From the IMG/VR virus record IMGVR_UViG_3300027899_000001, positions 186,001-250,000 of that record: 64,000 bases of DNA. One strand, given 5' to 3'. Position 1 is the stretch's first letter. Each line of letters begins with the position of its first letter. Of the stretch, positions 12,275-40,287 are shown one piece after another. Position numbers and translations under genes: made by a program. The notes beneath the pieces are model-generated. The model was not told the origin of the DNA. It was given only the letters and a program-made list of their open reading frames with translations, and made no database searches.

Positions 12275-12288
12275 TCGATATTTTGATA

Positions 12289-15200
12289 TTATTCATTTAT
12301 GTAATATTTAAATGTTGCGCCTGCAGTATTAAATATGGATACTAAACTAGTTAAATGAGTATTCATTGAAGAATCTGTGGGAATCGAATTAGTTCCTTTA
12401 GATAAATTCAAAGTTAGTGAATTATAACTTGCAGGATTATGTGCAGTAAACCAAGTGTCTAATTTAGTAAGTACATCATCTACAGTAAATAAGTCTAGCC
12501 CACAACCAGAAGCATCAATTGTATCAAATCTACCCGCAAATGCAGGAAATAATATTCTTGTAAGATTTGGATTATTATGAACATTCATATAATTATTTAT
12601 ATTTGTCAATCCTGAAATATCTAATGTTCCTGTTAAATTACAATCCCATGCATTAAAATATTCCATATCTTGCGCTGAAGAATGAAATAAAATTTCTGTG
12701 AGATTTGGATTATTTTGAACTTCAAAATCGAAGCCTAATCTTTTAATTGGACGAAGATCTAATGTGTCAGTTAAATTACAACTCCACGCATTAAAATAAT
12801 CAAAAAGAGCATTTGTGCTTGCACAAATTATTTGTGTAAGTTTTGGATTATCATAAACTTCAAAATCTTCTAAAATAGAAAGAGTAGATACATCTAAAAC
12901 TCCAACTAAATTATCAGCATCCATATATAAATATCGTATAGATGCTGGACCGCTAGTAGTACCATTATACACATTAACTATCTTATTTCCTGGCGATGAA
13001 TATGAATGACTAAAACTATTTGCATTTTGTGTTGTCAAGTCTCCTAAATCCCAACTAAGAGTTCCAGAGGAAACTGTAACATTTGGATCAAATGCATTTG
13101 TAGAAGCTTCAGTTGTAAAACTTAAAAATCCAATAGGTGCTACACTTTCACAATTAACAATTATAGTTAACAGCCAACTAGCATTTGTAAATATAGATTG
13201 TAAATTAACTATATCCGAATTATACATACAATCAGTTGGTCCAGAACCTCTTCCACATGAAACATCAATATACAATTCACCTACAGGAGTATTTAAACTA
13301 AACCACGTATTAAGTTTAGCAAATATATCATCCATTGTGCTTGTATTTAATGAACAATTATGAACATCAAATGTATTAAAATGTTGATTTATTGTAGGCA
13401 ATAATATAGATGTAAGATTTGGATTATTGTAAACTTCAAAATATCCACTTAAATTTGTAAGTCCTGAAACATCTAAAGTTCCAGTTAAATTACAATCATA
13501 AGCATAATATCCTGTAAATACTTGAGACGAAACAGGATTAAGTATCTTAGTAAGATTTGAGTTAGAATCAACATCAAATTCTCCGCCTAATCCTGTAAGT
13601 CCTGTTAAATCCAAAGTTCCATTAAGACTACAATCATGCGCATAATACCAATTAAATACTTCAGATGAAATTGGATTAAGTATAGAAGTAAGATTTGGAT
13701 TAGTATCAACATCAAAATATCCACCTAATCCTGTAAGTCCTGATACATCTAGAGTTCCTATTAAATCAGACTGATATGCATAGTAAAAATTTGAAGCAAA
13801 CGATTGAGATGAAACTGGATTAATTATTGTATTAAGACTAGGATTAATAGCAGCTCTAAATTGATTTAAATTAGTAAGATTTGAAAGATCTAAAGTTCCT
13901 ACTACACCAGCATTTTCATTTAAATCAAATCCAGTGACATCGGTTGATCCTGCAGTTGTTCCTGGTAATAATCTAACATGTTTATCTCCAGGAAGAGAAT
14001 AAATATATTCAAAATTATTAAAATTCATATAAGTTGTATCTCCCATATCTGTTTCAACTGTTCCGCTTGAAGTAGTATATGCAAACCAAATATCATATGT
14101 ATGATATAAAGTACCATATGCATTAGTAGTAAATTCTACCATAGGTGCAAGATTAATATGAATTAAAAGACCTTGTCCCCAATTAGAAAATATAGTTTGT
14201 AAATTTACTATATTTGTATTAGACCATTCAGCTGTTGGAGGAGAATTAGTTCCTCTTTCTGCGTGAATTTCTAAACTTTGTGTAGGGCCATTAAGAGTAT
14301 ACCATGCGTCTAATTTTGCAAATATATCATCTATTGTAAATAAATCTAAAGCACAATTATGAACATCAAAAACTGAAAATTGCTGATTTATTGTAGGTAA
14401 CAATATAGTTGTAAGATTTGGATTATCATAAACATGAAATTGTTCGCTTAAATTAATAAGATTAGATACATCTAATGTTCCATTAAGACTACAATTATAT
14501 GCATAATAATTTGTAAATACTTGAGATGAATCTGGATTAAGTATCTGAGTAAGATTTGGATTACCACTAACAAGAAATTGTCCACCTAATCCTGTAAGTC
14601 CTGTTAAATTTAAAGTTCCAGTTAAATTACAATTAGTTGCCCAGTAATTTACAAACACCTGAGATGAAACAGGATTAAGTATCTGTGTAAGATTTGGGTT
14701 AGTATAAACAAGAAATTGTTCGCCCAATCCTGTAAGTCCTGAAACATCTAAAGTTCCAGTTAAATTACAATCATATGCATAATAAGCTACAAATACTTGA
14801 GATGATACGGGGTTAAGTATTTGTGTAAGATTTGGATTACCACTAACACGAAATTGTCCACCTAATCCTGTAAGTCCTAATACATCTAAAGTTCCATTAA
14901 GACTACAATCATACGCAGCATAATAGTCAAACGCTTGAGATGAATCTGGATTAATTATTTGAGTAAGATTTGGATTATTATTAACATCAAAATATCCGCC
15001 TAACCCTGTAAGTCCCGAAACATTTAAAGTTCCAGTTAAATTATTATTATTCGCATAATATGTACTAAATATTTGAGAAGATGTTGGATTAATTATTTTT
15101 GTAAGATCGTGATTTGTTACAATATTCACATATTGTAAATTAATCAAACATGAAATATCTAAAACACCTATGATACTATCTGTTCCTACTGTAACTTGCC

Positions 15201-18200
15201 AAACATCTTCTGGCCCATTAGCTGTTCCCGGCCACACATTAATTGTTTTATTTCCTGGATTAGCATAAATATGATTTATTACATTTGCATCTACTGAAGT
15301 AGAAGTATCACCTAAATCCCAATTAAGTGTTCCATAGACTGAAAAATTAGTACTAAATGCATTTGTTGAAGCATTAGTTCTAAATTGTAAAAATCCTACT
15401 GATGGTTCTGCACAATTTATATAACAAGTAAACGTTCTACCTGCTACTGTAAAGATAGATTGTAAATTATCTATATTTATATTATTCCAACAATCTGTAG
15501 GAGGCGAGTTAGTTCCACCAGCAACATTAATTTCTAAGTTTTGTGTTGGAGGATTAATACTATAATATGCATCCATTTTAGCAAATATATCATCAACAGT
15601 AAATAAATCTAATGCACAATTATCAGCATAAAAATTAATAAATTCTTGATTTATTGTTGGCAATAATATAGTTGTAAGATTTGGATTTTGGCTAGCTGCA
15701 AATTGACCACCTAATTCTGTAAGTCCTGATACATCTAATGTTCCTGTTAAATTACATTGATACACACTAAAATTTTCAAATATTTGAGATGAAACAGGAT
15801 AAAATATTTGTGTAAGAAGAGGATTATTGTATGCCTGAAACGTTCCACCCAATCCTGTAAGTCCTGTAAGATCTAAAATTCCAGTTAAATCACAATTATA
15901 TACAACATAATGTGTAAATATTTCTGATGAAATTGGATTAAGTATTTGATTAAGACTTGGATTATTATTAATAAAAAACGTGCCGCTTAATCTAGTAAGT
16001 CCCGAAACGTCTAATGTTCCTGTTAAATTACAATTATATGCCTGATACCCAGTAAATACTTGTGATGAATCTGGATTAAGTATATGAGTTAAATTTGGAT
16101 TATTATAAACATAAAAATTTCCTCCCAATCCAGTAAGTCCTCGTAAATCTAAAGTATCTGTTATATTACAGCCCGTTGCACCGTAATATGTAAATATTTC
16201 AGATGAATTAGGATTAAGTATTGTATTAAGATTTGAATTACCACTAACCCAAAATCCGCCTCCTAATCCCGTTAGTCCTGAAACATCTAAAATTCCATTA
16301 AGACTACAATTATATGCATAATAATTTGTAAATATCTGTGATGAAACTGGATTAAGTATTTGTGTAAGATTTGGATTATTATTAATATAAAAATTTCCAG
16401 CTAATCCAGTAAGTCCTCTTAAATCTAAAGTTCCAGTTAAATTACAATTCTGCGCATAATAAGTTGTAAACACCTGAGATGAATCTGGATTAAGTATTTG
16501 TGTAAGATTTGGATTATTATAAACCCAAAAATCTGTACCTAATCCTGTAAGTCCAGAAACATCTAGAGTTTCAGTTAAATTACAATCATACGCATAATAA
16601 GTAGTAAATATTTGAGATGAAACGGGATTAAATATATGAGTTAAATTTGCATTACTACCTACATCAAAATATCCACCTAATCCCGTGAGTCCTGAAACAT
16701 CTAAAGTTTCAGTTAAATCGCAGCCAGATGCAGAATAACTAGTAAATACTGTAGATGAAACAGGATTAATTATTTTAGTAAGACTTGGATTACCATCAAC
16801 TCGAAGTTGCCATAAGTTATTAAGTGAAGAAACATCTAAAATCCCAGTTAAATAATCAAACCATAATACTATAACTCTTAATCCACTACTTCCATCAGTT
16901 GTTCCCGGATAGACATTAATAGTTTTGTTTCCAGAATTAGTATATGTATGAGTAAAATTATTTGAATTTACATTATTTGATGCATCACCTAAATTAGAAT
17001 TAAGAATTCCTGACCAAACACCAAACTGTAATGCAATTTCATATGCGGGAGGAGCATTAGTTGTAAAACGTAAAAATCCTACTGATGGCTCTGGATTACA
17101 ATTTATATAATATGTAAATGTTTGTCCTGCTCCAGTAAATATAGATTCTAGATGAACTATATTAGCATTCATTGAACAATCTGTAGGTGCTGCATTAGTT
17201 CCACCTGCTAGATTAACATATAACCCGTTAGAAGGAGAGTTACTAGTAAACCACGTATCTAATTTTGTAAATATATCATCTACAGTAAATAAATCTAAAG
17301 CACAGTTATTTCCATTTATATAAGTAAATGGCATATTAAGAGTAGGTAATAATAATGTATTAAGATTTATATTATCGCTAAATAATAAATAATCGCTTAA
17401 ATTTATAAATCCAGATACATCTAATATTCCAGTTATATTACAATTATCTATTAAATATGAAGTAACAATTTCTGAAGAAGTTGGATTAAGTACACTAGTT
17501 AAATTTGAATTATAATTAAGATAAATGTCTCCGCCTAATCTAGTTAATCCTCTTAAATCTAAAGTATCAGTTAAATTACAATTACCTACATCATACATTG
17601 TAAATACTTGAGATGAATTAGGATTAAGTACTGATGTAAGATGTAAATTATTATAAACTTCAAAATCTCCACCTAATCCTGTAAGGCCTGATACATCTAG
17701 AATTCCAGTTAAATCACAATTATATGCATAATAATTTGTAAAAATTTGAGAAGAAGTTGGATTAAGTATCTGTGTAAGATTAGGATTAGTATGAACTTCA
17801 AAATCTCCACCTAATCCTGTAAGTCCTGTTAAATCTAAAGTTCCAGTTAGATTACATAGTTGTGCCCAATATCCTTGATCAAAGACTTGAGATGAATTCG
17901 GATTAAGTATATGCGTAAGATTAGGATTATCATCAGCATCAAATCCCGAACCTAATCCAGTAAGTCCCGTTAAATCTAACGTATCAGTAAGATCACAACT
18001 ATATACCCAATATCCTTGATCAAAGACTTGAGACGAATTCGGATTAAGTATATGTGTAAGAAGCGGGTTACTGTCAGCATCAAAATATCCTCCTAATCCT
18101 GTAAGTCCAGAAACATCCAATGTTCCAGTAATATTAGAATTGTATACATCATACGTTGTAAATATTTGTGATGAAACTGGATTAAGTACTCGTGTAAGAT

Positions 18201-21200
18201 TAGAATTATTACCTACTTCAAATGTTCCTCCTAAGCCTGTAAGTCCTGAAACATCTAAAGTTCCAGTTAAATCGCAATTAACAGCTCGATATCTTGTATA
18301 TGCTTGTGATGAAACAGGATTGATTATTTTATTAAGACTTGGATCATTAGCAGTATAAAAATCAGTTAAATTGGTGAGACAAGAAATATCTAAAGTTCCG
18401 ACTATACCACTATAATCATATAATTGCATAGCTGTAATATCAGCACTTCCATTTGTTGTTCCTTTACTTAATATAACAGTTTTATCTCCAGCAAGAGAAT
18501 AAGTATAATCAAAATTATTAGAATCTCTTGTATTACTATCACCTAAATCCCAATGAAGTGTTCCCGAGGAAACTGTAAAATTAAAGTAAACATCAAATGG
18601 ATAATAAACAGTTCCATATGCATTTGTAACAAATCTTAAAATTTCACCAGCATCACAATTTATATAATATATAAAGGTTCTTCCTGCACTATTAAATAAT
18701 GATGTTAAATGAACTATATTAGTATTTAATTCGCAATCTGTTGGCGACGTGTTAGTACCATCTGCAACATTAATTTCTAAATTTTGAGTAGGCGGATTAC
18801 TACTATAATAAGTATCAAATTTTGCAAATATATCATCTACAGTAAATAAATCTAAAGCACAATTATTTGCGTTAAAAAATGTAAATTCATTATTTATTGT
18901 AGGTAATAATATAGTTGTAAGATTTACATTATTTTCAACTCTAATTCTATTGCTTAATCCTGTAAGTCCAGATACATCTAGTATGCCAGTTAAATTATTA
19001 TCATTTACATCATATTCTGTGAATACTTGTGATGAAACTGGATTAAGTATTTGAGTGAGAAGCGGATTTACTGTAATTTCTAAATCTCCTCCTAATCCTG
19101 TAAGTCCTCTTAAATCTAAAGTATCTGTTAAATTACAATAATTAGCTAAATAATATGAAAAAGGCTGCGATGAATCGGGATTAAGTATATGTGTAAGATT
19201 TGGATTACGAGTAACACTAAATTGAAAAGCTAAACCTGTAAGTCCAGAAATATCTAACGTTCCTGTTAAATTATTCCATGGACAATAATATCCTGAACTA
19301 ATTACATTAGAAGTAATTGGATTAATTATTTGATTTAAGCTTGGGCAATAAGCAACTTGAATATAATCATTTATACCTATAAGATTAGATAAATTTAAAG
19401 TTCCAACTATATTATTTTCATAAAAATCAACTGCACTTATTGCACTGTATCCGCTAGTAGTTCCGTTATATACTTTAACAGTTTTATCTCCTGTTGATGC
19501 GTAAGTATGAGAAAATGTATTTGCATTTACATTATTAGATGCATCACCTAAATCCCAGTTAAGAATACCTGAATATGTGGATAAACTTGGCTGAAATGTA
19601 TGAGTTGAAGAGTTAGTTATAAATTCAAATATAAGATCGCAATTTATATAATATGTGAATGTATGGCCTGCACTATTGAATACTGATGTTAAATGAACTA
19701 TATTAGCATTCATTGAACAATCAGTAGGAGGAGAATTGGTTCCTCCTGCAACATCAATAGTTAAATTTTGTGTAGGAGTATTACTACTATACCAAGTATC
19801 CATTTTTGCAAATATATCATCAACTGTAAATAAATCTAAAGCACAATTGTTAGCAAGTAAAACAACATATTCTCTATTTACAGTAGGAAAAAGTACAGTT
19901 GTAAGATTTGGATTATCATTAATATTAACCCATCCGCCTAATCCTGTAAGTCCTGATAGATCTAAAGTTCCAGTTAAATTACAATAAGATACTATATATT
20001 CTATAAATACCTGAGATGAAACAGGATTAAGTATTTCAGTAAGATTATAATTACTATCAACTCGAAAATCTCCGCCTAAACCAGTAAGTCCTCTTAGATC
20101 TAATGTTCCTGTTAAATTATTATTATCTAGCCAATAAAGTGTAAATACTTGAGATGAATTTGGATTAAGTATTTTAGTAAGGTTATAATTATTATCAATT
20201 TGAAAATATCCGCCTAATCCCGTAAGCCCTGATACATCTAAAGTATCAGTTAAATTACAACCTTGTGCCATATAGTTTGTAAATATAGTAGATGAAACCG
20301 GATTAAGCACATGTGTAAGATTTGAATTAAAATTAACATTAAAATAACTTAAATTAACGAAACTTGAAATATCTAATGTGTTTATTACACCATCTGTATC
20401 TATAAAAACTCCACTAACGTCTATTGCGCCACTAGTTGTTCCTGGATATACCTTTACAGTTTTATTACCAAAATTAACATATGTATGATTAATACTATTT
20501 GCATTTACATTATTAGATGCATCGCCCAAATCCCAATTAAGTGTTCCAGAAGGACCTGTAAAATTAGCTGAAAGAGGCCCTGAATAAGCATAAGTTGTAA
20601 AAGTTAAAAATGGTTCTTGGGCTGGTGAAGTGCAATTTATAGCATATGTAAATGTTTGTCCATATAATAAGAATTGTGCTTCAAGACTAACAATATTCGC
20701 ATTTAAAGAACAGTCTGTTGGTCCAGCATTTTTTGTTCCTGACATATTAACATTTAATGGTCCTGTAGGAGGATTACTTAAATAATATGCATCTAATTTT
20801 GCAAATATACTGTCTGCAGTAGCCGTATTTATAGAACAATCTTGAACGTTGAATTGATCAAATGGCTGTGAAAATACTGTTGGAAAAATTATAACATTAA
20901 GATTAGGATTATTTGCAAGTGAAAAATATCCACCTAATCCGGAAAGGCCAGAAAGATCTAATGTTCCAGTTAAATCACAATTATACGCTTCATATTGAGA
21001 AAATACCTGAGATGAAACTGGATTAAGTATTTGAGTAAGACCATAATTACCGCTAGCCCAAAATGATCCTCCTAATCCTGTAAGTCCCGAGACATCTAAA
21101 ATTCCAGTTAAATTATTATCATTTACGTGATAATAGTTAAATACTTGTGAAGAAACAGGATTAAGTATTTCAGGAAGACTAAAATTATACGCAATATCAA

Positions 21201-24200
21201 CATAATTACCTAATCCAGTAAGTCCTCTTAAATCTAAAGTATTAGTTAATCCTGACATTATTATTTGATAATATGAAAATACTTGAGATGAATTAGGATT
21301 AAGTATTTCAGTAAGATTATAGTTATTATCACACTGAAATCCTCCACCTAATCCAGTGAGACCTGTTAAATCTAAAGTTCCAATTAAATTACAATTACTT
21401 ACAGAATAAGTTGTAAATATTTCAGACGAAACTGGATTAAGTATAGATGTAAGATTTGCATTGTCATCAACTATAAAATTTCCACCTAATCCAGTAAGTC
21501 CTGAAATATCTAAAATATCAGTTAAATTACAACCAGATACAGCATATTGTGTAAATATCTGAGATGAAACTGGATTAATTATCTGTGTAAGATACGGATT
21601 ACTATAAATATTAAATATTCCACCTAAATTACTAAGACTTGATATGTCTAAAGTTCCAGTTAAATTATCATTATTCATATCAATTTGAATAATACTTGTA
21701 TTTCCTGATGTTGTTCCTGCATATACATTAACAGTTTTATTTCCTGCACTTGTATATGTATGTTCAAAACTATTTGAATTTAATATTGATCCATCACCTA
21801 AATCCCAATTAAGAATTCCCGAAGAAGTTGTGAATGTTGGATCAAATGCATCCGTTGAAGCATTAGTAGTAAATTCAAGTATTTTAACAGGTGGCGTGCA
21901 ATCACTATTTATGTAATAAGTAAATGTTTGTCCTGCTCCAGTAAATATAGATTCAAGATGAACTATATTAGCATTCATAGAGCAATCTGTAGGTGCTGCA
22001 TTAGTACCTCCAGCAGTATTAATAGTTAAATCTTGTGTAGGTGTATTACTGCTATACCATGTATCTAATTTTGCAAATATATCATCAACTGTAAATAAAT
22101 TTAATGAACAATTATTAGCACGAAAATGTATAAATTCTTGATTTATTGTAGGTAATAATATAGTTGTAAGATTAAGATTATTATTAATATACATCCGCCC
22201 TCCTAAACCAGTAAGTCCAGATACATCTAATGTTCCAGTTAAATTACAGCTTTCAGCAGTATAATATGTAAATACTTGAGATGAATCTGGATTAAGTATC
22301 TGAATTAAATTTTGATTACCATCAACATTGAAATCTCCACCTAATCCTGTAAGTCCTCTTAAATCTAAAGTTCCATTAAGACTGCAATCATATGCATAAT
22401 AAAATGTAAATATTTGAGATGAAATTGGATTAAGTATATGTGTAAGATTTGGATTATTATTAACAATAAATTCTCCACCCAATCCAGTAAGTGACGATAT
22501 ATCTAAAGTTCCAATTAAATTACAATTATTTGCATAATAAGCTACAAATACTTGAGATGAAATTGGGTTAAGTATTGAAGTAAGATTTGGGTTAGTAGTG
22601 ACTTCAAAATCTCCACCTAATCCCGTAAGTCCTCTTAAGTCTAAAGTATCTGTTAAATCACAATTATATGCATAATAAGTATTAAATATTTGAGATGAAA
22701 TCGGATTAAGTATTGATGTAAGATTAGGATTACTATCAACATCAAAATAATTTAAATTTATAAGACTCGAAATATCTAATGTTCCTACTAAATTATCAGT
22801 ATTTATATCAATTTCAGTAATTCCTGTACTTCCTGATGTTGTTCCACTATACACATTTACAGTTTTATTTCCAACGCTTGTATATGTGTGTGTAAAATTA
22901 TTTGAATTTAATGTTGAGCCATCTCCTAAGTTCCAGTTGAGTGTCCCGGATGAAGTAGTAAATGTTGGATCAAATGCCAATGTTGAAGCATTAGTAGTAA
23001 ACTGAAGTACTTTTGCTCCAACAGGAACACTACCACAACTAGCATTAATATAAATATTTAAAGTTCTTCCGGCACTAGTAAATATAGATCGTAAATTAAC
23101 TATGTCTGTATTATCCCAACAATTTGTCGGTGCTGCATTAGTTCCGCCAATAGTATTTATTGTTAGATTACCAGTAGGAGTATTACTGCTATAATAAGTA
23201 TTAAATTTTGTAAATATATTATCTACTGTAAATTGATCTAATGCACATACACTTACATCAAATGATGTAAATTGTCTATTAATTGTAGGTAAAAGTATTC
23301 TTGATAAATTTGTATTATTTCCAGCTCTAAATACACCGCCCAAATTAATTAATCCTGAAACATCTAAAGTTCCATTTAAGCTACAATTATTTACATAATA
23401 ATTTGTAAATACTTGTGTTGAATTAGGATTAAGTATTTGTGTAAGATTTGGATTATATCGAGCTAAAAATTGTCCACCTAAACCTGTAAGTCCTCTTAAA
23501 TCTAATGTTCCAGTTAAATTACAATCACGTACAGTATATAGTGTAAATAGTCGTGATGAAACTGGATTAAGTATTTGTGTAAGATTTGACTGAGCAGAAG
23601 TTGCAAATGATCCACCTAATCCCGTAAGTCCCGAAACATCTAAAGTTCCATTAAGACTACAATTTTGTACACTATATGCTATAAAATTTTGAGATGAAAC
23701 AGGATTAAGTATCGATGTAAGATTTGGATTATTATCAACAGTAAAAACTCCTCCTAATCCTGTAAGTCCTTTTAAATCTAATGTTCCTGTTAAATTACAA
23801 TCATTTACTTGATAAACCGAAAATGTTCGTGATGTAGTAGGATTAAGTACATTAGTAAGATTTGGATTACTATAAACTATAAGTTGTCCACCAAAGTTTG
23901 TAAGTCCTGAAATATCTAATACTCCATTAAGACTGCAATTATATGCATAATAATTTGTAAATATTTGAGAAGAAACCGGATTAAGTATTTTAGTAAGTTT
24001 ACTATTATTATATACCAAAAATTGTCCTCCTAATCCTGTAAGTCCTGAAACATCTAAAGTTCCAGTTAAACTACAATCATATGCATGATAAGTAGTAAAT
24101 GCTTGTGATGAAACAGGATTAACTATTTGTGTAAGAAGTGAATTACCATAAACAGAAAAAGCTCCACCTAAATTGCTAAGACTTGATATATCTAAAATTC

Positions 24201-27200
24201 CAACTAGATTATCATTATACATCTGTATAGTAGTTATTCCTGTACTTCCTGATGTTGTTCCACTATATACATTTACAGTTTTATTTCCAACACTTGTATA
24301 TGTATGTACAAAATTATTTGCATTTAATATTGAACCATCTCCTAAATCCCAATTTAAAATTCCAGAAGAAACTGCAATTGATGGGTCAAATGCCAATATT
24401 GAAGCATTAGTTGTAAATTGAAGTACTTTTGATCCAACAATATCACAATTTATAAAATATATAAATGTAAATTCTGATTCTGCAAATATAGATTCAAGAT
24501 GAGCTATATTAGCATTCATAGAACAATCTGTAGGCGGTGAGTTAGTTCCGTTTGCTACGTTGACTGTTAAATTTTGATTAGGTGAATTACTACTATAATA
24601 TGTATCTAATTTTGCAAATATATCATCAACTGTAAATAAATCTAAATCACAATTATCCGCATCAAAATCAATAATTTGTTGATTTATTGTAGGTAATAAT
24701 ATAGTTGTAAGATTTGGATTGTTATAAGCATAGAAATATCCGCCTAATCCTGTAAGCCCTGTTAAATCTAATGTATTACTTAAATTACATTCATATGCCC
24801 AATAATATGTAAATACTTGAGATGAATCTGGATTAAGTATCTGTGTAAGATTTGAATTACTATAAACATAAAAACTTCCACCTAATCCTGTTAATCCTGA
24901 AACATTTAAAGTTCCTGTTAAATCACAACTATATGCACTATAATTTTCAAATATTTGTGTTGAAACTGGATTAAGTATTGATGTAAGATTTGGATTAACA
25001 TCAACACTAAAACTTCCACCTAATCCTGTAAGTCCTGAAACATCTAAAGTTTCTGTAAGATTACATTCATCTATATAATATGAATGGAATATCTCAGATG
25101 AAACAGGATTAAGTACATGTGTAAGAAGAGGATTATAACTAAGTGAAAATACTCCACCCAATCCAGTTAATCCTCTTAAATCTAACGTATCAGTTAAATT
25201 ACAATTATATACTTGATATGAAGAAAATGCCTGAGATGAAACTGGATTAAGTATATGTGTAAGAAGTGGATTATAACTAAGATCAAATCCTCCACCCAAT
25301 CCAGTAAGTCCTGAAACATCTAAAGTTCCAGTAATATTAGATAATTCTACATGATAAGTATTAAATACCTGAGATGAAACTGGATTAAATATTTGTGTAA
25401 GTGTAGAATTACTATAAACACTAAGTGATTGTAAATTTATAAGACTTGAAATATCTAAAAGTCCTACTAAATTATCTCCATTCATATTAATGCTAGTTAT
25501 TCCAGTACTTCCTGATGTTGTTCCAGTGTATACACTAACAGTCTTGTTTCCTACACTTGTATATGTATGAGTAAAACTATTTGAATTTACATAAGATGAC
25601 CCATCTCCTAAATCCCAATTTAAAACTCCTGAAGAAACTGTAAATGCTGGATCAAACGATAATGTTGAGGCATTAGTTGTAAATCTAAGTACCTGTGATC
25701 TAACGATATCGCAATTTATATAATACGTAAATATTTGTCCAGCTGAATCAAATATAGATTCAAGATGAACTATATTCGTATTTAATGAACAATCGGTTGG
25801 CGGAGTATTAGTACCACCAGCAACATCAACAGTCAAACTTTGATTCGGGGAATTAGAAGAATACCAAGTATCAAATTTAGAAAATATCCCATCTACTGTT
25901 AGTAAATTTAATGAACAATTATTAGCATTAAATATGTTGAATTCTCCTGATAATGTAGTGGGTAAAAGTATTGATGAAAGATTAGGATTATTATAGACTT
26001 CAAATCCTGATGTTAAATTTATAAGCCCCGATACATCTAATGTGCCTGTTAAATTACAATCATTAGCAGCATAATAATCAATAATTTGAGTTGAAGAAGG
26101 ATTAAGTATTGTTGTTAAATTTGTATTATTTCCTGCATAAAAAATACCTCCTAGATTTGTAAGTCCTTGTAAATCTAAAGTTCCAGTTAAATCGCAATCA
26201 TTTACATAATAACCAGTAAATACTTGAGATGAAACCGGATTTAATATAGTATTTAAATGTGGATTATAATTAACCCAAAACATTCCACCTAATCCGTCAA
26301 GTCCTGAAACATCTAATATTCCTGTAAGATTACAATTACCCGCACTATATGTATTAAATGAACGCGAAGAATCTGGGTTAAGTATTTTAGTAAGATTTAA
26401 ATTATAATCAGCAGAAAAATTACCGCCTAATCCTGTAAGTCCTGAAACATCTAATATTCCTGTTAAATTACAGTTATCAACTTCATAATGACTAAACGCT
26501 TGAGAAGAAACTGGATTACGTATTGATGTAAGATTTACGTTATTCTTAACATCAAAAACTCCTCCTAATTCAGTAAGTCCTCTTAAATCTAATGTATCTG
26601 TTAAATTACACTCAAATGCAAGATACGCGTTAAAAGGATGTGTTGAAACTGGATTAAGTATATGTGTAAGATTTGGATTTTTAGAAACTTCAAACCATCC
26701 ACTTAATCCTGTAAGTCCTGATACATCTAAAGTATCAGTTAAATCACACGTTTGCACATTATATTGTGTAAATACTTGAGATGAAATTGGATTAAGTATA
26801 TGTGTAAGATTAACATTTCCTATTGCTGTAAAATTGCCACCTAAATTTGTTAATCCACTAATATCTAATGTACCTGTTAAATTACAATAATTTGCATTAT
26901 ATAAATTAAATATTTGCGATGAGACGGGATTAATTATTCTATTAATTCCATAATTCTCATTAACAGTTAATTGTGTTAAAGAAATAAGAGAAGATATATC
27001 TAATACTCCTACTATATTATCATTACCCATATCTATTTGAGTAATACCTGTGCTTCCTGAAGCAGTACCTTTATACACTTCAACTGTTTTGTTTCCTACT
27101 AATGTATATGTATGTGAAATACTATTTGCATTTACATTACTTGATATATCACCCAAATTCCAACTAAGAATACCCGATGTAACATTGATTGCTGGATCAA

Positions 27201-27297
27201 ATATTAAAGTGGACGCATTAGTTATAAATCTAAATATAGGCATTCCGGGATGCCTATATTGAGATACTATTCCATGAGTGAGTATAGGGTTATTCAT
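12289..27297 (-). CDS. Giant modular PKD-like + leucine-rich-repeat protein, 5002 aa (putative adhesin/receptor-binding protein)
   Basis: 12 modules, each with a PKD-like domain (WDLGD...HTY...GNKTVxVY), tandem 46-aa double-LRR units (TGTLDVSGLTGLGGxFxVxxNPNLTxILNPVSSQxFxxYxAxxCNL) and a cap (VDDIFAKLDTWY...GGTNxPPTDC...YYINC). Confidence 0.8.
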   Translation of the reverse strand: MNNPILTHGIVSQYRHPGMPIFRFITNASTLIFDPAINVTSGILSWNLGDISSNVNANSISHTYTLVGNKTVEVYKGTASGSTGITQIDMGNDNIVGVLDISSLISLTQLTVNENYGINRIINPVSSQIFNLYNANYCNLTGTLDISGLTNLGGNFTAIGNVNLTHILNPISSQVFTQYNVQTCDLTDTLDVSGLTGLSGWFEVSKNPNLTHILNPVSTHPFNAYLAFECNLTDTLDLRGLTELGGVFDVKNNVNLTSIRNPVSSQAFSHYEVDNCNLTGILDVSGLTGLGGNFSADYNLNLTKILNPDSSRSFNTYSAGNCNLTGILDVSGLDGLGGMFWVNYNPHLNTILNPVSSQVFTGYYVNDCDLTGTLDLQGLTNLGGIFYAGNNTNLTTILNPSSTQIIDYYAANDCNLTGTLDVSGLINLTSGFEVYNNPNLSSILLPTTLSGEFNIFNANNCSLNLLTVDGIFSKFDTWYSSNSPNQSLTVDVAGGTNTPPTDCSLNTNIVHLESIFDSAGQIFTYYINCDIVRSQVLRFTTNASTLSFDPAFTVSSGVLNWDLGDGSSYVNSNSFTHTYTSVGNKTVSVYTGTTSGSTGITSINMNGDNLVGLLDISSLINLQSLSVYSNSTLTQIFNPVSSQVFNTYHVELSNITGTLDVSGLTGLGGGFDLSYNPLLTHILNPVSSQAFSSYQVYNCNLTDTLDLRGLTGLGGVFSLSYNPLLTHVLNPVSSEIFHSYYIDECNLTETLDVSGLTGLGGSFSVDVNPNLTSILNPVSTQIFENYSAYSCDLTGTLNVSGLTGLGGSFYVYSNSNLTQILNPDSSQVFTYYWAYECNLSNTLDLTGLTGLGGYFYAYNNPNLTTILLPTINQQIIDFDADNCDLDLFTVDDIFAKLDTYYSSNSPNQNLTVNVANGTNSPPTDCSMNANIAHLESIFAESEFTFIYFINCDIVGSKVLQFTTNASILAFDPSIAVSSGILNWDLGDGSILNANNFVHTYTSVGNKTVNVYSGTTSGSTGITTIQMYNDNLVGILDISSLSNLGGAFSVYGNSLLTQIVNPVSSQAFTTYHAYDCSLTGTLDVSGLTGLGGQFLVYNNSKLTKILNPVSSQIFTNYYAYNCSLNGVLDISGLTNFGGQLIVYSNPNLTNVLNPTTSRTFSVYQVNDCNLTGTLDLKGLTGLGGVFTVDNNPNLTSILNPVSSQNFIAYSVQNCSLNGTLDVSGLTGLGGSFATSAQSNLTQILNPVSSRLFTLYTVRDCNLTGTLDLRGLTGLGGQFLARYNPNLTQILNPNSTQVFTNYYVNNCSLNGTLDVSGLINLGGVFRAGNNTNLSRILLPTINRQFTSFDVSVCALDQFTVDNIFTKFNTYYSSNTPTGNLTINTIGGTNAAPTNCWDNTDIVNLRSIFTSAGRTLNIYINASCGSVPVGAKVLQFTTNASTLAFDPTFTTSSGTLNWNLGDGSTLNSNNFTHTYTSVGNKTVNVYSGTTSGSTGITEIDINTDNLVGTLDISSLINLNYFDVDSNPNLTSILNPISSQIFNTYYAYNCDLTDTLDLRGLTGLGGDFEVTTNPNLTSILNPISSQVFVAYYANNCNLIGTLDISSLTGLGGEFIVNNNPNLTHILNPISSQIFTFYYAYDCSLNGTLDLRGLTGLGGDFNVDGNQNLIQILNPDSSQVFTYYTAESCNLTGTLDVSGLTGLGGRMYINNNLNLTTILLPTINQEFIHFRANNCSLNLFTVDDIFAKLDTWYSSNTPTQDLTINTAGGTNAAPTDCSMNANIVHLESIFTGAGQTFTYYINSDCTPPVKILEFTTNASTDAFDPTFTTSSGILNWDLGDGSILNSNSFEHTYTSAGNKTVNVYAGTTSGNTSIIQIDMNNDNLTGTLDISSLSNLGGIFNIYSNPYLTQIINPVSSQIFTQYAVSGCNLTDILDISGLTGLGGNFIVDDNANLTSILNPVSSEIFTTYSVSNCNLIGTLDLTGLTGLGGGFQCDNNYNLTEILNPNSSQVFSYYQIIMSGLTNTLDLRGLTGLGNYVDIAYNFSLPEILNPVSSQVFNYYHVNDNNLTGILDVSGLTGLGGSFWASGNYGLTQILNPVSSQVFSQYEAYNCDLTGTLDLSGLSGLGGYFSLANNPNLNVIIFPTVFSQPFDQFNVQDCSINTATADSIFAKLDAYYLSNPPTGPLNVNMSGTKNAGPTDCSLNANIVSLEAQFLLYGQTFTYAINCTSPAQEPFLTFTTYAYSGPLSANFTGPSGTLNWDLGDASNNVNANSINHTYVNFGNKTVKVYPGTTSGAIDVSGVFIDTDGVINTLDISSFVNLSYFNVNFNSNLTHVLNPVSSTIFTNYMAQGCNLTDTLDVSGLTGLGGYFQIDNNYNLTKILNPNSSQVFTLYWLDNNNLTGTLDLRGLTGLGGDFRVDSNYNLTEILNPVSSQVFIEYIVSYCNLTGTLDLSGLTGLGGWVNINDNPNLTTVLFPTVNREYVVLLANNCALDLFTVDDIFAKMDTWYSSNTPTQNLTIDVAGGTNSPPTDCSMNANIVHLTSVFNSAGHTFTYYINCDLIFEFITNSSTHTFQPSLSTYSGILNWDLGDASNNVNANTFSHTYASTGDKTVKVYNGTTSGYSAISAVDFYENNIVGTLNLSNLIGINDYIQVAYCPSLNQIINPITSNVISSGYYCPWNNLTGTLDISGLTGLAFQFSVTRNPNLTHILNPDSSQPFSYYLANYCNLTDTLDLRGLTGLGGDLEITVNPLLTQILNPVSSQVFTEYDVNDNNLTGILDVSGLTGLSNRIRVENNVNLTTILLPTINNEFTFFNANNCALDLFTVDDIFAKFDTYYSSNPPTQNLEINVADGTNTSPTDCELNTNIVHLTSLFNSAGRTFIYYINCDAGEILRFVTNAYGTVYYPFDVYFNFTVSSGTLHWDLGDSNTRDSNNFDYTYSLAGDKTVILSKGTTNGSADITAMQLYDYSGIVGTLDISCLTNLTDFYTANDPSLNKIINPVSSQAYTRYRAVNCDLTGTLDVSGLTGLGGTFEVGNNSNLTRVLNPVSSQIFTTYDVYNSNITGTLDVSGLTGLGGYFDADSNPLLTHILNPNSSQVFDQGYWVYSCDLTDTLDLTGLTGLGSGFDADDNPNLTHILNPNSSQVFDQGYWAQLCNLTGTLDLTGLTGLGGDFEVHTNPNLTQILNPTSSQIFTNYYAYNCDLTGILDVSGLTGLGGDFEVYNNLHLTSVLNPNSSQVFTMYDVGNCNLTDTLDLRGLTRLGGDIYLNYNSNLTSVLNPTSSEIVTSYLIDNCNITGILDVSGFINLSDYLLFSDNINLNTLLLPTLNMPFTYINGNNCALDLFTVDDIFTKLDTWFTSNSPSNGLYVNLAGGTNAAPTDCSMNANIVHLESIFTGAGQTFTYYINCNPEPSVGFLRFTTNAPPAYEIALQFGVWSGILNSNLGDASNNVNSNNFTHTYTNSGNKTINVYPGTTDGSSGLRVIVLWFDYLTGILDVSSLNNLWQLRVDGNPSLTKIINPVSSTVFTSYSASGCDLTETLDVSGLTGLGGYFDVGSNANLTHIFNPVSSQIFTTYYAYDCNLTETLDVSGLTGLGTDFWVYNNPNLTQILNPDSSQVFTTYYAQNCNLTGTLDLRGLTGLAGNFYINNNPNLTQILNPVSSQIFTNYYAYNCSLNGILDVSGLTGLGGGFWVSGNSNLNTILNPNSSEIFTYYGATGCNITDTLDLRGLTGLGGNFYVYNNPNLTHILNPDSSQVFTGYQAYNCNLTGTLDVSGLTRLSGTFFINNNPSLNQILNPISSEIFTHYVVYNCDLTGILDLTGLTGLGGTFQAYNNPLLTQIFYPVSSQIFENFSVYQCNLTGTLDVSGLTELGGQFAASQNPNLTTILLPTINQEFINFYADNCALDLFTVDDIFAKMDAYYSINPPTQNLEINVAGGTNSPPTDCWNNINIDNLQSIFTVAGRTFTCYINCAEPSVGFLQFRTNASTNAFSTNFSVYGTLNWDLGDTSTSVDANVINHIYANPGNKTINVWPGTANGPEDVWQVTVGTDSIIGVLDISCLINLQYVNIVTNHDLTKIINPTSSQIFSTYYANNNNLTGTLNVSGLTGLGGYFDVNNNPNLTQIINPDSSQAFDYYAAYDCSLNGTLDVLGLTGLGGQFRVSGNPNLTQILNPVSSQVFVAYYAYDCNLTGTLDVSGLTGLGEQFLVYTNPNLTQILNPVSSQVFVNYWATNCNLTGTLNLTGLTGLGGQFLVSGNPNLTQILNPDSSQVFTNYYAYNCSLNGTLDVSNLINLSEQFHVYDNPNLTTILLPTINQQFSVFDVHNCALDLFTIDDIFAKLDAWYTLNGPTQSLEIHAERGTNSPPTAEWSNTNIVNLQTIFSNWGQGLLIHINLAPMVEFTTNAYGTLYHTYDIWFAYTTSSGTVETDMGDTTYMNFNNFEYIYSLPGDKHVRLLPGTTAGSTDVTGFDLNENAGVVGTLDLSNLTNLNQFRAAINPSLNTIINPVSSQSFASNFYYAYQSDLIGTLDVSGLTGLGGYFDVDTNPNLTSILNPISSEVFNWYYAHDCSLNGTLDLTGLTGLGGEFDVDSNSNLTKILNPVSSQVFTGYYAYDCNLTGTLDVSGLTNLSGYFEVYNNPNLTSILLPTINQHFNTFDVHNCSLNTSTMDDIFAKLNTWFSLNTPVGELYIDVSCGRGSGPTDCMYNSDIVNLQSIFTNASWLLTIIVNCESVAPIGFLSFTTEASTNAFDPNVTVSSGTLSWDLGDLTTQNANSFSHSYSSPGNKIVNVYNGTTSGPASIRYLYMDADNLVGVLDVSTLSILEDFEVYDNPKLTQIICASTNALFDYFNAWSCNLTDTLDLRPIKRLGFDFEVQNNPNLTEILFHSSAQDMEYFNAWDCNLTGTLDISGLTNINNYMNVHNNPNLTRILFPAFAGRFDTIDASGCGLDLFTVDDVLTKLDTWFTAHNPASYNSLTLNLSKGTNSIPTDSSMNTHLTSLVSIFNTAGATFKYYINE
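12300..27240 (-). repeat. Nested repeats: 138-nt LRR units inside 12 supermodules of about 0.8-1.7 kb
   Basis: 138-nt period seen in DNA (e.g. 23891 vs 24029). Module starts near 27240, 25700, 24430, 23010, 21885, 20615, 19635, 18645, 17080, 15400, 14140 and 13135. Confidence 0.85.
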
Positions 27298-27300
27298 ATC

Positions 27301-36752: not shown

Positions 36753-37487
36753 ATGACTAAACAAGAAGTTGTACAATATGTTAATGGAGAAATCACAGCA
36801 TCGTGCTCTATTCCATTTTCTGTACCAGAAGCTGAAATATTAAGATTAATAGATTTAGAATCTAAATGGCTTTACCGTGAATATCGAGACGCAGTACAAG
36901 ATGGTTATTATGTGTTAGATAAAAAGTATTATCAAACATCTGAATGGAGGTCAACAAGAACATTTCAATTACCTGATTGCGTTATGGCAATTAAATATAT
37001 TTACGAAATGACTTCAGGCCAAAGAGTTTTTGGTATTCATGACCCAGATATGAATTTTGATAGATTAATGGCAGCTGATTTATATTTGACTCCTCTTTCT
37101 TCAGATCAAATAACATACAGAACAATTCAATGGAGTTTTTGGGATTTGGCAAAGCAATTTAACTTAAGAGATATTAATCATCATTTTAGTATAAATACAA
37201 AAAGATTAATAATTACAGGTAGAGATCCAGTAGAATCTCTTTGGCTTACAACATTAAATGCAATTCCAAATGAAGATCTTTATGATGATCCTGTTTTTAT
37301 ACGTTGGATAATAGCAAAAGCAAAAGTACAATTAGCAAGAATTATTGGAACATTTAACTATACACTTATTGGAGGCATTCAAATAAATTATAATGATATA
37401 AGAATAGAAGGACAAGAAGAATTAAAAGAATTAAAAGATAAAATTAAGAGCGATTCACCAGCTGATTGGTTCATGATGTTTTCATAA
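36753..37487 (+). CDS. Neck/head-tail adaptor protein, T4 gp13-like, 244 aa
   Basis: C-terminal AKAKVQLARIIGTFNYTLIGGIQINYNDIRIEGQEELKEL matches the gp13-type LPGGVxxN...E..E..L pattern. Confidence 0.65.
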   Translation: MTKQEVVQYVNGEITASCSIPFSVPEAEILRLIDLESKWLYREYRDAVQDGYYVLDKKYYQTSEWRSTRTFQLPDCVMAIKYIYEMTSGQRVFGIHDPDMNFDRLMAADLYLTPLSSDQITYRTIQWSFWDLAKQFNLRDINHHFSINTKRLIITGRDPVESLWLTTLNAIPNEDLYDDPVFIRWIIAKAKVQLARIIGTFNYTLIGGIQINYNDIRIEGQEELKELKDKIKSDSPADWFMMFS

Positions 37488-37503
37488 TGAACCACTTATG
37501 AAT

Positions 37504-38871: not shown

Positions 38872-38897
38872 GGGAGAATTTTTCTCCCTTTCGTTTT
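38870..38897 (+). terminator. Intrinsic terminator-like hairpin
   Basis: AAGGGAGA-atttt-TCTCCCTT followed by TCGTTTT. Confidence 0.65.
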
Positions 38898-38904
38898 ATA
38901 GAAG

Positions 38905-38918
38905 ATATATAAAATAAA
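38905..38918 (+). promoter_or_regulatory. Putative late promoter motif (copy 5)
   Basis: Exact motif between the hairpin and the ATG at 38928. Confidence 0.6.
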
Positions 38919-38927
38919 AAGTATTTA

Positions 38928-39565: not shown

Positions 39566-39581
39566 AAATAAAATATAAAAA

Positions 39582-40286: not shown

Positions 40287-40287
40287 T

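What the first reader, a model, noticed from the sequence alone, without database searches (positions are those of the whole stretch)
12289..27297. 5,002-aa phage protein of 12 PKD-LRR-cap modules with variable LRR faces
Seen: an almost invariant 46-aa double-LRR scaffold, while positions around FxVxxN and FxxYxAxxC vary from repeat to repeat and are rich in Y/W/D/E/N. LRR number differs between modules, and most caps hold a Cys pair (TDC...INC). Established: these positions form the concave binding face of LRR solenoids, as in variable lymphocyte receptors and internalins. Inference: a string of up to 12 binding specificities reshuffled by recombination between 138-nt units.
Basis: partly seen in the sequence, partly recalled or inferred. 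Interest (0 to 1): 0.7.

Follow-up and report, generated by a model that had tools for sequence, protein, structure and literature searches.

The report
Giant 12-module LRR adhesin of a megaphage
A 405-kb freshwater megaphage encodes a real 5,002-residue protein made of twelve PKD–leucine-rich-repeat–cap modules, each with a different tyrosine/aspartate-rich surface, which is most likely a many-headed adhesion fibre and is the only protein of this family and size found in billions of database sequences.

Summary
Window 12289-27297 (- strand) is one intact 5,002-aa ORF (541 kDa, pI 4.05) under the standard code. It has 12 modules, each a PKD domain, an LRR solenoid and a helical cap. There are 70 double-LRR anchors, 3-9 per module, and 10 of 12 caps carry a Cys pair.

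Sequence entropy peaks at unit positions 15/17/19/20 and 38/40/42/43. These are positions 3, 5, 7 and 8 of LxxLxLxx(N/C), the outward-facing residues of the strand before the Asn/Cys ladder. They are enriched in Y, W, D, E, N and Q. dN/dS is about 1.5 there and 0.36 on the scaffold. An AF2 model of one module (pLDDT 95) matches solved LRR proteins (Z about 22).

The gene lies in a complete 405-kb genome with direct terminal repeats and a Lak-like capsid protein. It sits directly after a ~1,430-residue collagen-like fibre gene and beside tail and baseplate genes. Relatives are almost all single-module proteins in the same position. One syntenic ortholog has one module.

The reading as a multivalent adhesin is supported by inference only. 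"Reshuffling by recombination between 138-nt units" is not shown: units are about 70% identical, no strain variants were found, and the genome has no reverse transcriptase. I rate it a new variant of a known kind.

The parts
12289..27297 (-). Complete ORF of 5,002 aa plus a TAA stop; the 12-module PKD-LRR-cap protein (P0001), 541 kDa, pI 4.05
25711..27297 (-). Module 1 (aa 1-529), 8 LRR anchors. It starts with the conserved N-terminal peptide MNNPILTHGIVSQYRH, followed directly by the PKD domain.
   Evidence: the same peptide is present in the single-module ortholog of L011
24445..25710 (-). Module 2 (aa 530-951), 6 anchors. This is the module that was modelled.
   Evidence: AF2 pLDDT 94.9, pTM 0.91; top PDB matches are all LRR proteins, Z up to 22.5
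23035..24444 (-). Module 3 (aa 952-1421), 7 anchors; the second Cys of the cap is shifted (YINASC)
21898..23034 (-). Module 4 (aa 1422-1800), 5 anchors; cap ends YINSDC
20632..21897 (-). Module 5 (aa 1801-2222), 6 anchors; most divergent internal cap
19639..20631 (-). Module 6 (aa 2223-2553), 4 anchors
   Evidence: two-module model M6-M7 pLDDT 93, pTM 0.72
18655..19638 (-). Module 7 (aa 2554-2881), 4 anchors
17098..18654 (-). Module 8 (aa 2882-3400), 8 anchors. Its PKD has a 5-aa insert shared with module 11; two of its units are 47 aa long.
15412..17097 (-). Module 9 (aa 3401-3962), 9 anchors; the longest LRR run
14149..15411 (-). Module 10 (aa 3963-4383), 6 anchors; the cap has lost both Cys (PTAEW...HINL)
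13150..14148 (-). Module 11 (aa 4384-4716), 4 anchors
12292..13149 (-). Module 12 (aa 4717-5002), 3 anchors. It is the most divergent module. Its terminal cap has no Cys pair and ends ...YINE, like the C-termini of single-module relatives.
27301..32556 (-). Upstream gene of a conserved pair: a 1,751-aa collagen-like protein. It has a ~205-aa N-terminal domain, ~1,430 residues of G-x-y triplets, and a ~110-aa C-terminal domain like those of PHROG 'virion structural' and 'minor tail' proteins. It ends in TAA three bases before the LRR gene's ATG.
   Evidence: Pfam Collagen E 1.5e-195; sequence; PHROG hits; junction; collagen-then-LRR order recurs in L010, L011 and L014
8224..12249 (-). Downstream gene on the same strand, 39 nt after the LRR stop: a 1,341-aa protein with a conserved ~600-aa N-terminal part and repeated 'YVDxSLxxRDxSI' motifs, possibly a tail fibre (the atlas leads are below significance). 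Its ortholog also follows the LRR gene in L011.
   Evidence: 52% identity to L011:11771-14608; only weak atlas leads to tail-fibre and baseplate families
36753..42186 (+). Context: the divergently transcribed virion module, with a head-tail adaptor (36753-37487) and a baseplate wedge subunit (40288-42186)
   Evidence: PHROG phrog_211 E 1.4e-7 and phrog_219 E 5.7e-22

Best explanation
The ORF is a genuine late/structural gene of a ~405-kb freshwater megaphage whose capsid protein is Lak-like. It encodes a 541-kDa, very acidic, lysine-poor protein built from 12 tandem copies of a unit that exists as a complete single-module protein in related phages. Each unit has three parts. First, a PKD-type Ig sandwich that leads straight into the solenoid. 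Second, an LRR solenoid of alternating 23-aa repeats: type A is FxxYxAxxC-NLTGTLDxSG and type B is LxGLGGxFxVxxN-PNLTxILNP, giving a mixed Cys/Asn ladder. Third, a two-helix cap. Caps that are followed by another module carry a covarying Cys pair, probably a disulfide. On every repeat, the outward-facing residues of the strand before the ladder residue are hypervariable and rich in Tyr, Trp, Asp and Asn, so each module presents its own extended binding sheet. My inferred mechanism is that the protein is displayed on the virion, together with or near the neighbouring ~400-nm collagen-like fibre and the tail-fibre genes. There it would act as a multivalent and probably multispecific adhesin. Twelve different LRR faces joined by short (2-8 residue) linkers would capture host-surface ligands, raising the adsorption rate and/or widening the range of hosts or receptor variants. 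The array arose by duplication of whole modules followed by divergence of the faces. Shown: the architecture, the fold class, the pattern of variability, the genomic setting and the family distribution. Inferred: virion display, ligand binding and distinct specificities.
For: Intact ORF and 12 modules. PKD confirmed by Pfam and by ColH PKD structures. AF2 model pLDDT 94.9; the best PDB matches are all LRR proteins, namely LIC11098 Z 22.5, InlJ with its cysteine ladder Z 21.7, InlF, and BspA-type Bacteroides proteins Z 14-18. Hypervariable positions are LRR positions 3, 5, 7 and 8 in both repeat types, and the same holds in 421 units from 149 homologs, rho 0.78. dN/dS is 1.5 at those sites against 0.36 on the scaffold; Y, W, D, E, N and Q are enriched. 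Every face is different. Phage setting: major head protein 48% identical to Lak megaphages; head protease and major head protein; baseplate wedge and head-tail adaptor nearby; complete 405-kb genome with direct terminal repeats. The gene order collagen-like gene, then PKD-LRR gene, then the homolog of the 1,341-aa protein holds in L011. A collagen-like gene directly precedes the PKD-LRR gene in L010 and L014 as well, and the pair occurs a second time in the same genome. The collagen C-terminal domain hits PHROG virion structural and minor tail families. The closest multi-module relative, P0002, carries lectin-like Fib_succ_major domains. Cys-pair covariation: 12 of 12 against 3 of 88. Lys is 0.9% against 9.0% in the phage's other ORFs. 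There are ten same-strand ORFs in a row, and the six gaps that lie inside the window are 3-39 nt.
Against: There is no direct evidence that the protein is in the virion or binds anything. The protein has no recognisable anchoring domain beyond a 17-aa conserved N-terminal peptide. Exposed strand positions of any LRR are the least constrained, so high entropy there is partly expected without selection for binding, and dN at those sites is near saturation. Concavity was not measured because no coordinates were available. Foldseek TM-scores to solved LRRs are low (0.2-0.35), so the curvature or twist differs from classical horseshoes. The gene is known from a single assembly lineage only.
Confidence: 0.6

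Rival explanations
1. The protein is a passive structural fibre or spacer. The modules only give length and stiffness. The variable faces reflect neutral drift at unconstrained surface positions, plus selection against misfolding between neighbouring near-identical domains.
For: Variability at the x positions of LxxLxL is expected in any LRR. The units show a star-like pattern with no clear sub-families. Tandem domains commonly diverge. Short linkers and pTM 0.72 for two modules fit a semi-rigid rod.
Against: Other exposed positions (3, 8, 12, 45) are clearly less variable than the sheet positions. The Tyr/Trp/Asp/Asn enrichment with almost no Lys, in a 28% GC genome whose other proteins have 9% Lys, is not a drift composition. 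dN/dS is above 1 only at those sites. Relatives pair the module with lectin-like domains. A collagen-like protein already supplies length next door.
Confidence: 0.17
2. The protein is an adhesin for non-host surfaces. It would tether the virion to particles, biofilm matrix, mucus or algal/cyanobacterial sheaths where hosts are dense (a BAM-like sub-diffusive search), rather than recognising the infection receptor.
For: PKD/Ig-like domains on phages are linked to such adherence in the BAM model (cited in PMC10945359). The protein is huge, acidic and fibre-associated. The sample is a freshwater metagenome.
Against: The gene sits among tail, baseplate and fibre genes rather than head-decoration genes. 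The diversity of faces suggests co-evolving targets. No test could separate this reading from host binding here.
Confidence: 0.13
3. The protein has an intracellular role. It would be made or injected during infection to bind host proteins, for example as a decoy or sponge against defence systems, and would not be a virion surface protein.
For: LRR domains are protein-protein interaction modules in bacterial effectors and immune sensors (matches to IpaH, SlrP and NLR LRRs). The protein has no signal peptide or anchor domain.
Against: PKD domains, a covarying Cys pair, lysine depletion, the conserved pairing with a collagen-like fibre gene and the tail-gene neighbourhood all point to an extracellular structural role. 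The 541-kDa size is implausible for an injected or early protein.
Confidence: 0.06
4. The array is an assembly artefact, that is, a repeat mis-assembled into an over-long array.
For: The gene is known from one metagenome assembly lineage. Logan k=31 contigs break inside the repeats and show two alternative joints.
Against: Copies are only 60-84% identical and the longest exact repeat is 45 nt, which is shorter than a short read. The reading frame stays open for 15 kb. Depth is even at ~38-45x and the contigs match with zero mismatches. The contig closes with direct terminal repeats at 405 kb. All 70 faces are different.
Confidence: 0.02

Closest known systems
BspA-type / LRR_5 (PF13306) surface proteins of Bacteroidota, Treponema and Trichomonas, and their phage-encoded look-alikes
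   Same: 23-aa repeats with a conserved Cys and beta-strands on two sides of the solenoid; adhesin role. Family members P0012 (53 bits), P0058 and P0006 hit LRR_5 in the region that phmmer aligns to this protein's LRRs. Solved BspA-type proteins match at Z 14-18. BFVD holds phage 'Leucine rich repeat 5', 'BspA family' and 'internalin-like' proteins.
   Different: This protein itself hits no Pfam LRR model at E<=0.1 (residues 1-1300 and 4400-5002) or E<=1 (residues 1301-4399). Its repeats alternate two types with a Cys/Asn ladder. It has PKD N-caps and a helical C-cap. The module is repeated 12 times, and there is no signal peptide or T9SS sorting domain.
Listeria internalins (InlA/B/F/J)
   Same: An LRR solenoid fused to an Ig-like domain and a cap, binding through the beta-sheet face. 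InlJ has a cysteine ladder in place of Asn. InlJ and InlF are among the top structural matches, Z 21.5-21.7.
   Different: In internalins the order is cap, LRR, Ig-like; here it is Ig-like (PKD), LRR, cap. Sequence identity is below 20%. Internalins have one LRR domain per protein and are anchored to the cell wall. Foldseek TM-scores are low, so the curvature differs.
Variable lymphocyte receptors of lamprey and hagfish
   Same: An invariant LRR scaffold with hypervariable residues on the sheet positions, Tyr/Trp/Asp/Asn-rich paratopes, Cys-containing caps and a variable number of LRRs.
   Different: VLR diversity is made somatically by copying cassettes into one incomplete gene. Here all variants are hard-wired in series in one polypeptide. 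No cassette store, reverse transcriptase or deaminase-type mechanism was seen, and there are no LRRNT/LRRCT homologs. This is an analogy only.
Phages with several receptor-binding proteins (multi-tailspike phages) and jumbo-phage fibre 'clouds' such as the Goslar DUF7941 proteins with LRR/beta-helix domains
   Same: Many binding heads on one virion, proposed to widen host recognition. LRR domains are proposed as host-recognition elements in Goslar gp86/gp92/gp161 (10.64898/2026.04.21.720040).
   Different: In those phages each specificity is a separate protein on a branched adaptor. Here up to 12 heads are fused in one chain. There is no DUF7941 domain, and the lineage is different (Lak-like rather than Chimalliviridae).

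Membership tests
Leucine-rich repeat superfamily | Tandem 20-30-aa repeats carrying LxxLxLxx(N/C)xL | tested here: met
   23-aa repeats. Type A has F13 xx Y16 x A18 xx C21 x L23; type B has G36 xx F39 x V41 xx N44 xx L. N44 is the most conserved residue in the family at 0.07 bit.
Leucine-rich repeat superfamily | Right-handed solenoid fold with a parallel beta-sheet formed by the LxL strands | tested here: met
   AF2 pLDDT 94.9 with strands in exact 23-aa register. All top PDB matches are LRR proteins, Z up to 22.5. This is a prediction, not a solved structure.
Leucine-rich repeat superfamily | Match to a curated LRR sequence model (Pfam LRR_1-12) | tested here: not met
   No Pfam LRR family at E<=0.1 (residues 1-1300 and 4400-5002) or E<=1 (residues 1301-4399). 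Only homologs reach LRR_5.
Leucine-rich repeat superfamily | Variable residues lie on the concave face | tested here: inconclusive
   Motif register and strand alternation place them on the outward side of the canonical sheet.
PKD domain (PF18911 / PF00801) | Score above the Pfam gathering threshold and the WDFGDG-type motif | tested here: met
   PKD_4 scores 56.8 and 99.4 bits against a cutoff of 27. There are 12 W(D/N)LGD motifs. The profile aligns to the ColH PKD domains.
BspA-like LRR_5 family | Pfam PF13306 above threshold | tested here: not met
   Not detected in this protein. It is detected in homologs P0012 (53.4 bits against 27.7) and P0058 (33.2 bits), so the link is by transitive homology only.
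Diversity-generating retroelement target | A reverse transcriptase and template repeat in the genome | tested here: not met
   No RVT_1 match in the complete 405-kb genome, while the control genomes gave matches.
Variable lymphocyte receptor system | An incomplete germline gene plus flanking LRR cassettes copied in somatically | tested here: not met
   The gene is complete and in frame. The only other LRR copies in the genome are another intact gene at 391-398 kb.
Phage tail fibre / receptor-binding protein | Presence in the virion and binding to the host receptor | not testable with these tools
   Only context is available: the tail, baseplate and collagen-fibre neighbourhood and its conserved synteny. 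There is no PHROG match for the protein itself.
Lak-like megaphage (genome context) | Hallmark structural genes related to the Lak phages | tested here: met
   The major head protein is 48% identical over 98% of its length to the Prevotella Lak phages. The genome is 405 kb with direct terminal repeats. All three stop codons are used, so there is no sign of the stop-codon recoding that I recall being reported for Lak phages (my own knowledge, not checked in a paper here).

The most novel reading that the evidence does not exclude
One viral polypeptide carries a hard-wired library of twelve independently diverged LRR binding sites on a common scaffold, a germline, in-series counterpart of VLR or antibody repertoires. 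This would let a single megaphage particle recognise many different host surface variants or host species. The number of modules (1 to 12 across relatives) would then tune host range.
Probability: 0.3. Interest if true: 0.8.

Novelty: new variant of a known kind. Interest (0 to 1): 0.6.

Why it matters
How megaphages find their hosts is unknown, because only one has been cultured. LRR domains are a classic recognition scaffold in animals, plants and bacterial pathogens, but they have hardly been studied in phages.

This gene defines a phage LRR family of about 590 representative clusters that Pfam LRR models and PHROGs do not detect in this protein. It shows that one lineage multiplied the recognition module twelve-fold.

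If the modules bind different ligands, this protein would be a natural example of polyvalent host recognition built into one chain. It would also offer a compact, well-folding and naturally diversified scaffold for engineered binders. Finally, it gives a concrete handle for identifying the hosts of uncultured megaphages: express single modules and pull down or stain cells.

Tried and rejected
1. Similarity to GenBank phages. Megablast of the structural region and tblastn of module 1 against 50,697 phage records gave nothing.

2. Stop-codon recoding or read-through. The collagen ORF, the LRR ORF and the next ORF are all in one frame. However, the junction stop is TAA, all three stop codons end ORFs in this genome, and 93% of the genome is coding under table 11. 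I did not invoke another code.

3. DGR mutagenesis. There is no reverse transcriptase in the complete genome.

4. Recent recombination or gene conversion. The longest exact repeat is 45 nt. Nearest-neighbour units are scattered (1 of 46 in the same module). PKD and cap identity matrices are uncorrelated in either register (rho -0.05 and 0.09). AU tests were one-sided: the PKD data reject the cap clade (p 6e-8), but the cap data do not reject the PKD clade M8+M11 (p 0.11). I therefore class mosaicism as suggestive only.

5. Strain comparison. L007, from another sample, is 100% identical to the second paralog locus. A metagenome scan with module 12 returned only the same 405-kb contig.

6. Cellular homologs. 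A pattern scan of 185,579 species genomes found none; its sensitivity is limited.

7. Complex prediction of the collagen C-terminal domain (three copies) with the LRR N-terminus gave no verdict, score 0.02. This is no evidence either way.

8. Atlas search of the downstream 1,341-aa protein gave only sub-threshold leads to tail-fibre and baseplate families.

9. Sequence search of the PDB found only PKD domains, not the LRR part.

10. Moraphages (PMC12619734) were considered as the lineage. They reach only 307 kb, and that paper does not mention collagen, leucine or PKD. Membership was not tested.
Full report
**1. The observation**

Window 12289-27297 on the - strand is a single ORF of 5,002 codons ending in TAA. 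It has no internal stop under the standard code. The product is 541 kDa with a pI of 4.05.

Twelve W(D/N)LGD motifs and twelve 'PT(D/N)C...YINC' caps divide it into 12 modules. Pfam recognises the PKD domains: PKD_4 scores 56.8 and 99.4 bits against a cutoff of 27. A profile of the modules aligns to the PKD domains of collagenase ColH.

Seventy 'TLDxSGL' anchors lie exactly 46 residues apart within modules, occasionally 45 or 47. The counts per module are 8, 6, 7, 5, 6, 4, 4, 8, 9, 6, 4 and 3. Ten of the 12 caps carry the Cys pair; M10 and the C-terminal M12 have lost both Cys.

**2. The pattern of variability**

- In 46 gap-free units, most scaffold positions have under 1 bit of entropy. Positions 15, 17, 19, 20 and 38, 40, 42, 43 have 2.3-3.6 bits.
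- Both halves of the unit fit the LRR signature. Type A reads F13-x-x-Y16-x-A18-x-x-C21-x-L23. Type B reads G36-x-x-F39-x-V41-x-x-N44. The hypervariable sites are therefore positions 3, 5, 7 and 8 of LxxLxLxx(N/C).
- These are the alternate, outward-pointing residues of the strand that precedes the Asn/Cys ladder. By established LRR structural knowledge, that is the ligand-binding sheet.
- These sites are 20% Tyr, 20% Asn, 12% Asp and 3% Trp, with almost no Lys.
- Among the paralogous units, dN/dS is about 1.5 at the eight sites and 0.36 on the 33 scaffold codons (dS about 0.5). The non-synonymous distance is near saturation.
- All 70 type-B faces and 67 of 70 type-A faces are unique.
- The same positions are the most variable in 421 units taken from 149 homologs (Spearman 0.78). 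The pattern is therefore a property of the family, not of this gene alone.

**3. The fold**

An AF2 model of module 2, using the 12 modules as the alignment, has pLDDT 94.9 and pTM 0.91. It shows a beta-sandwich, then a solenoid with four strands per 46 residues, then a cap of two helices.

- Foldseek and VIA-align return only LRR proteins at the top: Leptospira LIC11098 (Z 22.5), InlJ with its cysteine ladder (21.7), the RPP1 LRR (21.6), InlF (21.5), and BspA-type Bacteroides proteins (Z 14-18).
- Foldseek TM-scores are low (0.2-0.35), so the overall curvature or twist differs from classical horseshoes.
- I could not read the coordinates. 'Concave' is therefore inferred from motif register, not measured.
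- A two-module model (M6-M7) has pLDDT 93 but pTM 0.72, with a four-residue linker between the cap and the next PKD. The modules are confidently folded, but their mutual orientation is less certain.

No Pfam LRR model matches the protein at any point. Homologs that phmmer aligns over the same region do hit LRR_5, the BspA type. This is a sequence-divergent branch of that kind of LRR.

**4. The Cys pair**

In caps collected from the family, all 12 that have the first Cys also have the second. Only 3 of 88 caps without the first Cys have a Cys near the second site. The pair occurs only in caps that are followed by another module. Terminal caps end '...IN(T/E/Y)' at the protein's C-terminus, as M12 does. 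This covariation fits a disulfide, or another paired site, that stabilises internal junctions.

**5. Where the gene lives**

- The held genome is a 133-kb record, but the same 15,009 nt are 100% identical in IMGVR_UViG_3300027899_000001 (contig Ga0209668_10000002). That contig is 405,016 bp, has direct terminal repeats and is rated complete.
- The major head protein is 48% identical over 98% of its length to those of the Prevotella Lak megaphages.
- The only run holding the sequence is a freshwater metagenome.
- TAA, TGA and TAG all terminate ORFs, and coding density is 93% under table 11, so no alternative code is indicated.

The gene is second in a run of ten same-strand ORFs; the six gaps that lie inside the window are 3-39 nt:

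- a 1,751-aa collagen-like protein;
- this gene;
- a 1,341-aa protein with 'YVDxSLxxRDxSI' repeats;
- ORFs of 389, 380, 1,578, 609, 276, 592 and 156 aa.

The run is transcribed divergently from a block that holds a head-tail adaptor and a baseplate wedge subunit.

The collagen-like protein has about 1,430 residues of G-x-y triplets. At 0.29 nm per residue that is roughly 400 nm, by my own arithmetic. Its C-terminal domain resembles those of PHROG 'virion structural protein' and 'minor tail protein' families.

**6. Relatives**

An exhaustive phmmer search with one module found 588 representative proteins at E<=1e-3, of which 186 are at E<=1e-30. The members I looked up came only from metagenome collections (JGI/IMG, ENA, Logan).

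- Among the best 150, 76 have one PKD motif and 72 have none detectable. Only a handful are multi-module: P0002 (4 PKD motifs, 2,782 aa, with Fib_succ_major lectin-like domains), P0003 (5, 2,709 aa) and P0004 (2).
- In the 2,750-8,750-aa class of 5.8 billion clusters, the only homolog is P0002.
- The PKD-LRR gene directly follows a collagen-like gene in L010, L011 and L014. In L012 and L013 it follows a ~1,000-aa protein without collagen repeats. The pair occurs a second time in this same genome, as a collagen-like gene followed by a 2,290-aa, 2-PKD, 26-anchor protein at 391-398 kb.
- The best syntenic ortholog is in L011. Its S1-domain neighbour is 69% identical and its downstream 946-aa protein (the homolog of the 1,341-aa protein) is 52% identical. 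It begins with the same peptide MNNPILTHGIVSQYRH but has one module and 858 aa.

The 12-module protein is therefore a lineage-specific expansion by whole-module duplication.

No homolog was found in 50,697 GenBank phage genomes by tblastn, nor in 185,579 prokaryote species genomes by pattern scan. BFVD does hold structurally similar phage proteins annotated PKD, LRR_5, BspA-like or internalin-like.

**7. Recombination**

The DNA units average 70% identity (maximum 84%). Module-scale copies are 60-82% identical, and the longest exact repeat is 45 nt.

- Only 1 of 46 units has its nearest relative in the same module, none is adjacent, and a few consensus-like units act as hubs. This looks like a star-like, old divergence.
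- PKD and cap similarity matrices are uncorrelated, whether a cap is paired with its own PKD or with the next one.
- The PKD data strongly reject a clade seen in the cap tree (p 6e-8), but the cap data do not reject the one well-supported PKD clade (p 0.11). Past exchange between modules is possible but not demonstrated.
- No strain variant was available. The only other sample holding this phage is 100% identical over 14 kb, and the metagenome scan returned the same contig.
- There is no reverse transcriptase, so this is not a DGR.

**8. The artefact question**

Copies this diverged are unambiguous for short reads. The frame stays open over 15 kb. Logan's k=31 contigs of the run match with zero mismatches at an even 38-45x depth and break only where 31-mers repeat. 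Two alternative joints rest on 34-38-nt sides. The run may be the source sample, so this is consistency, not independent proof.

**9. Interpretation**

The best reading is a virion-displayed, multivalent adhesin (confidence about 0.6). The reasons are:

- a recognition fold with face-specific hypervariability and a paratope-like composition;
- Ig-like domains and a likely disulfide;
- a ten-fold depletion of lysine relative to the phage's other proteins;
- conserved pairing with a collagen-like fibre gene next to tail genes;
- lectin-like domains in the nearest multi-module relative.

Whether the twelve faces have twelve specificities is open (about 0.3). Ongoing cassette-like reshuffling is unlikely on present evidence (about 0.15).

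The rivals are a passive spacer, adhesion to non-host surfaces, an intracellular binder and an assembly artefact; each is weighed in its own section. A complex prediction between the collagen C-terminal trimer and the LRR N-terminus gave no verdict and is not used.

**10. Novelty**

LRR and PKD domains are known in phage proteins and are proposed as host-recognition elements, for example in Goslar (10.64898/2026.04.21.720040). None has been characterised functionally as far as my searches reached.

What is new here is a distinct, sizeable phage LRR family with a PKD-LRR-cap module, and its 12-fold tandem expansion into the family's only giant member, in a Lak-related freshwater megaphage. I class it as a new variant of a known kind.

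Noticed in passing
window 27301-32556 (-): A 1,751-aa collagen-like protein with ~475 G-x-y triplets (mostly G-x-Q), by my arithmetic a ~400-nm triple helix. Local GC is 43% against 28% for the genome, with strong skew. The C-terminal 110 aa match PHROG virion structural and minor tail C-termini. The spurious +-strand ORFs listed inside it are a by-product of the repeat.
   Followed up: partly
window 27295-27303 and 12249-12291: The collagen ORF, the LRR ORF and the next ORF are all in the same reading frame. The first two are separated by TAA-GAT and the last two by TAA plus 13 codons. All three stop codons are used genome-wide and nothing indicates recoding or read-through.
   Followed up: yes
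G001:C1:386870-404856 (L010; identical in L007 from another sample): A second collagen-like plus PKD-LRR gene pair in the same phage genome: a collagen-like ORF of >1,235 aa, then a 2,290-aa protein with 2 PKD motifs and 26 LRR anchors, followed by another collagen-like ORF of >1,668 aa near the genome end.
   Followed up: partly
whole record (G000 against G001): The 133-kb record that holds the window is a fragment of a complete 405,016-bp genome with direct terminal repeats. Its major head protein is 48% identical to the Prevotella Lak megaphages, yet it comes from a freshwater metagenome and uses the standard code.
   Followed up: partly
window 5859-7001 and 7025-8194 (-): Two adjacent ORFs (380 and 389 aa) match consecutive parts (398-701 and 9-395) of one PHROG profile of 1,092 positions (phrog_29329, function unknown). 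This looks like a gene that is single in other phages and split here.
   Followed up: no
window 39582-40286 (+): A homing-endonuclease ORF (phrog_314, E 5.6e-43) sits directly upstream of the baseplate wedge gene, inside the virion structural block.
   Followed up: no
window 12289-27297 (-): Extreme composition: Lys 0.9% and Glu 1.6% against 9.0% and 6.8% in the phage's other ORFs; Asn+Thr+Ser 33%; net charge about -280. There are two N-x-T sequons per 46-aa unit.
   Followed up: partly
window 8224-12249 (-): The 1,341-aa downstream protein has a conserved ~600-aa N-terminal part (52% identical to a 946-aa ortholog in L011). Its C-terminal half is built of variable numbers of 'YVDxSLxxRDxSI...ATYIPNASL' repeats. 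It is possibly a tail fibre whose repeat number also differs between relatives.
   Followed up: partly
window 32698-33915 (+): A 405-aa protein with three S1 RNA-binding domain stretches is transcribed divergently from the fibre operon. It is 69% identical in the related contig L011, and an ORF of similar size sits at the same position in the other relatives.
   Followed up: no
window 14298-17199 and 16373-16671: Logan contigs of run X1 show two alternative joints inside the array: one skips 297 nt and one goes back 2,902 nt. They rest on only 34-38 nt of flanking match. They are most simply de Bruijn graph ambiguities at shared 31-mers, but a minority length variant is not excluded.
   Followed up: no
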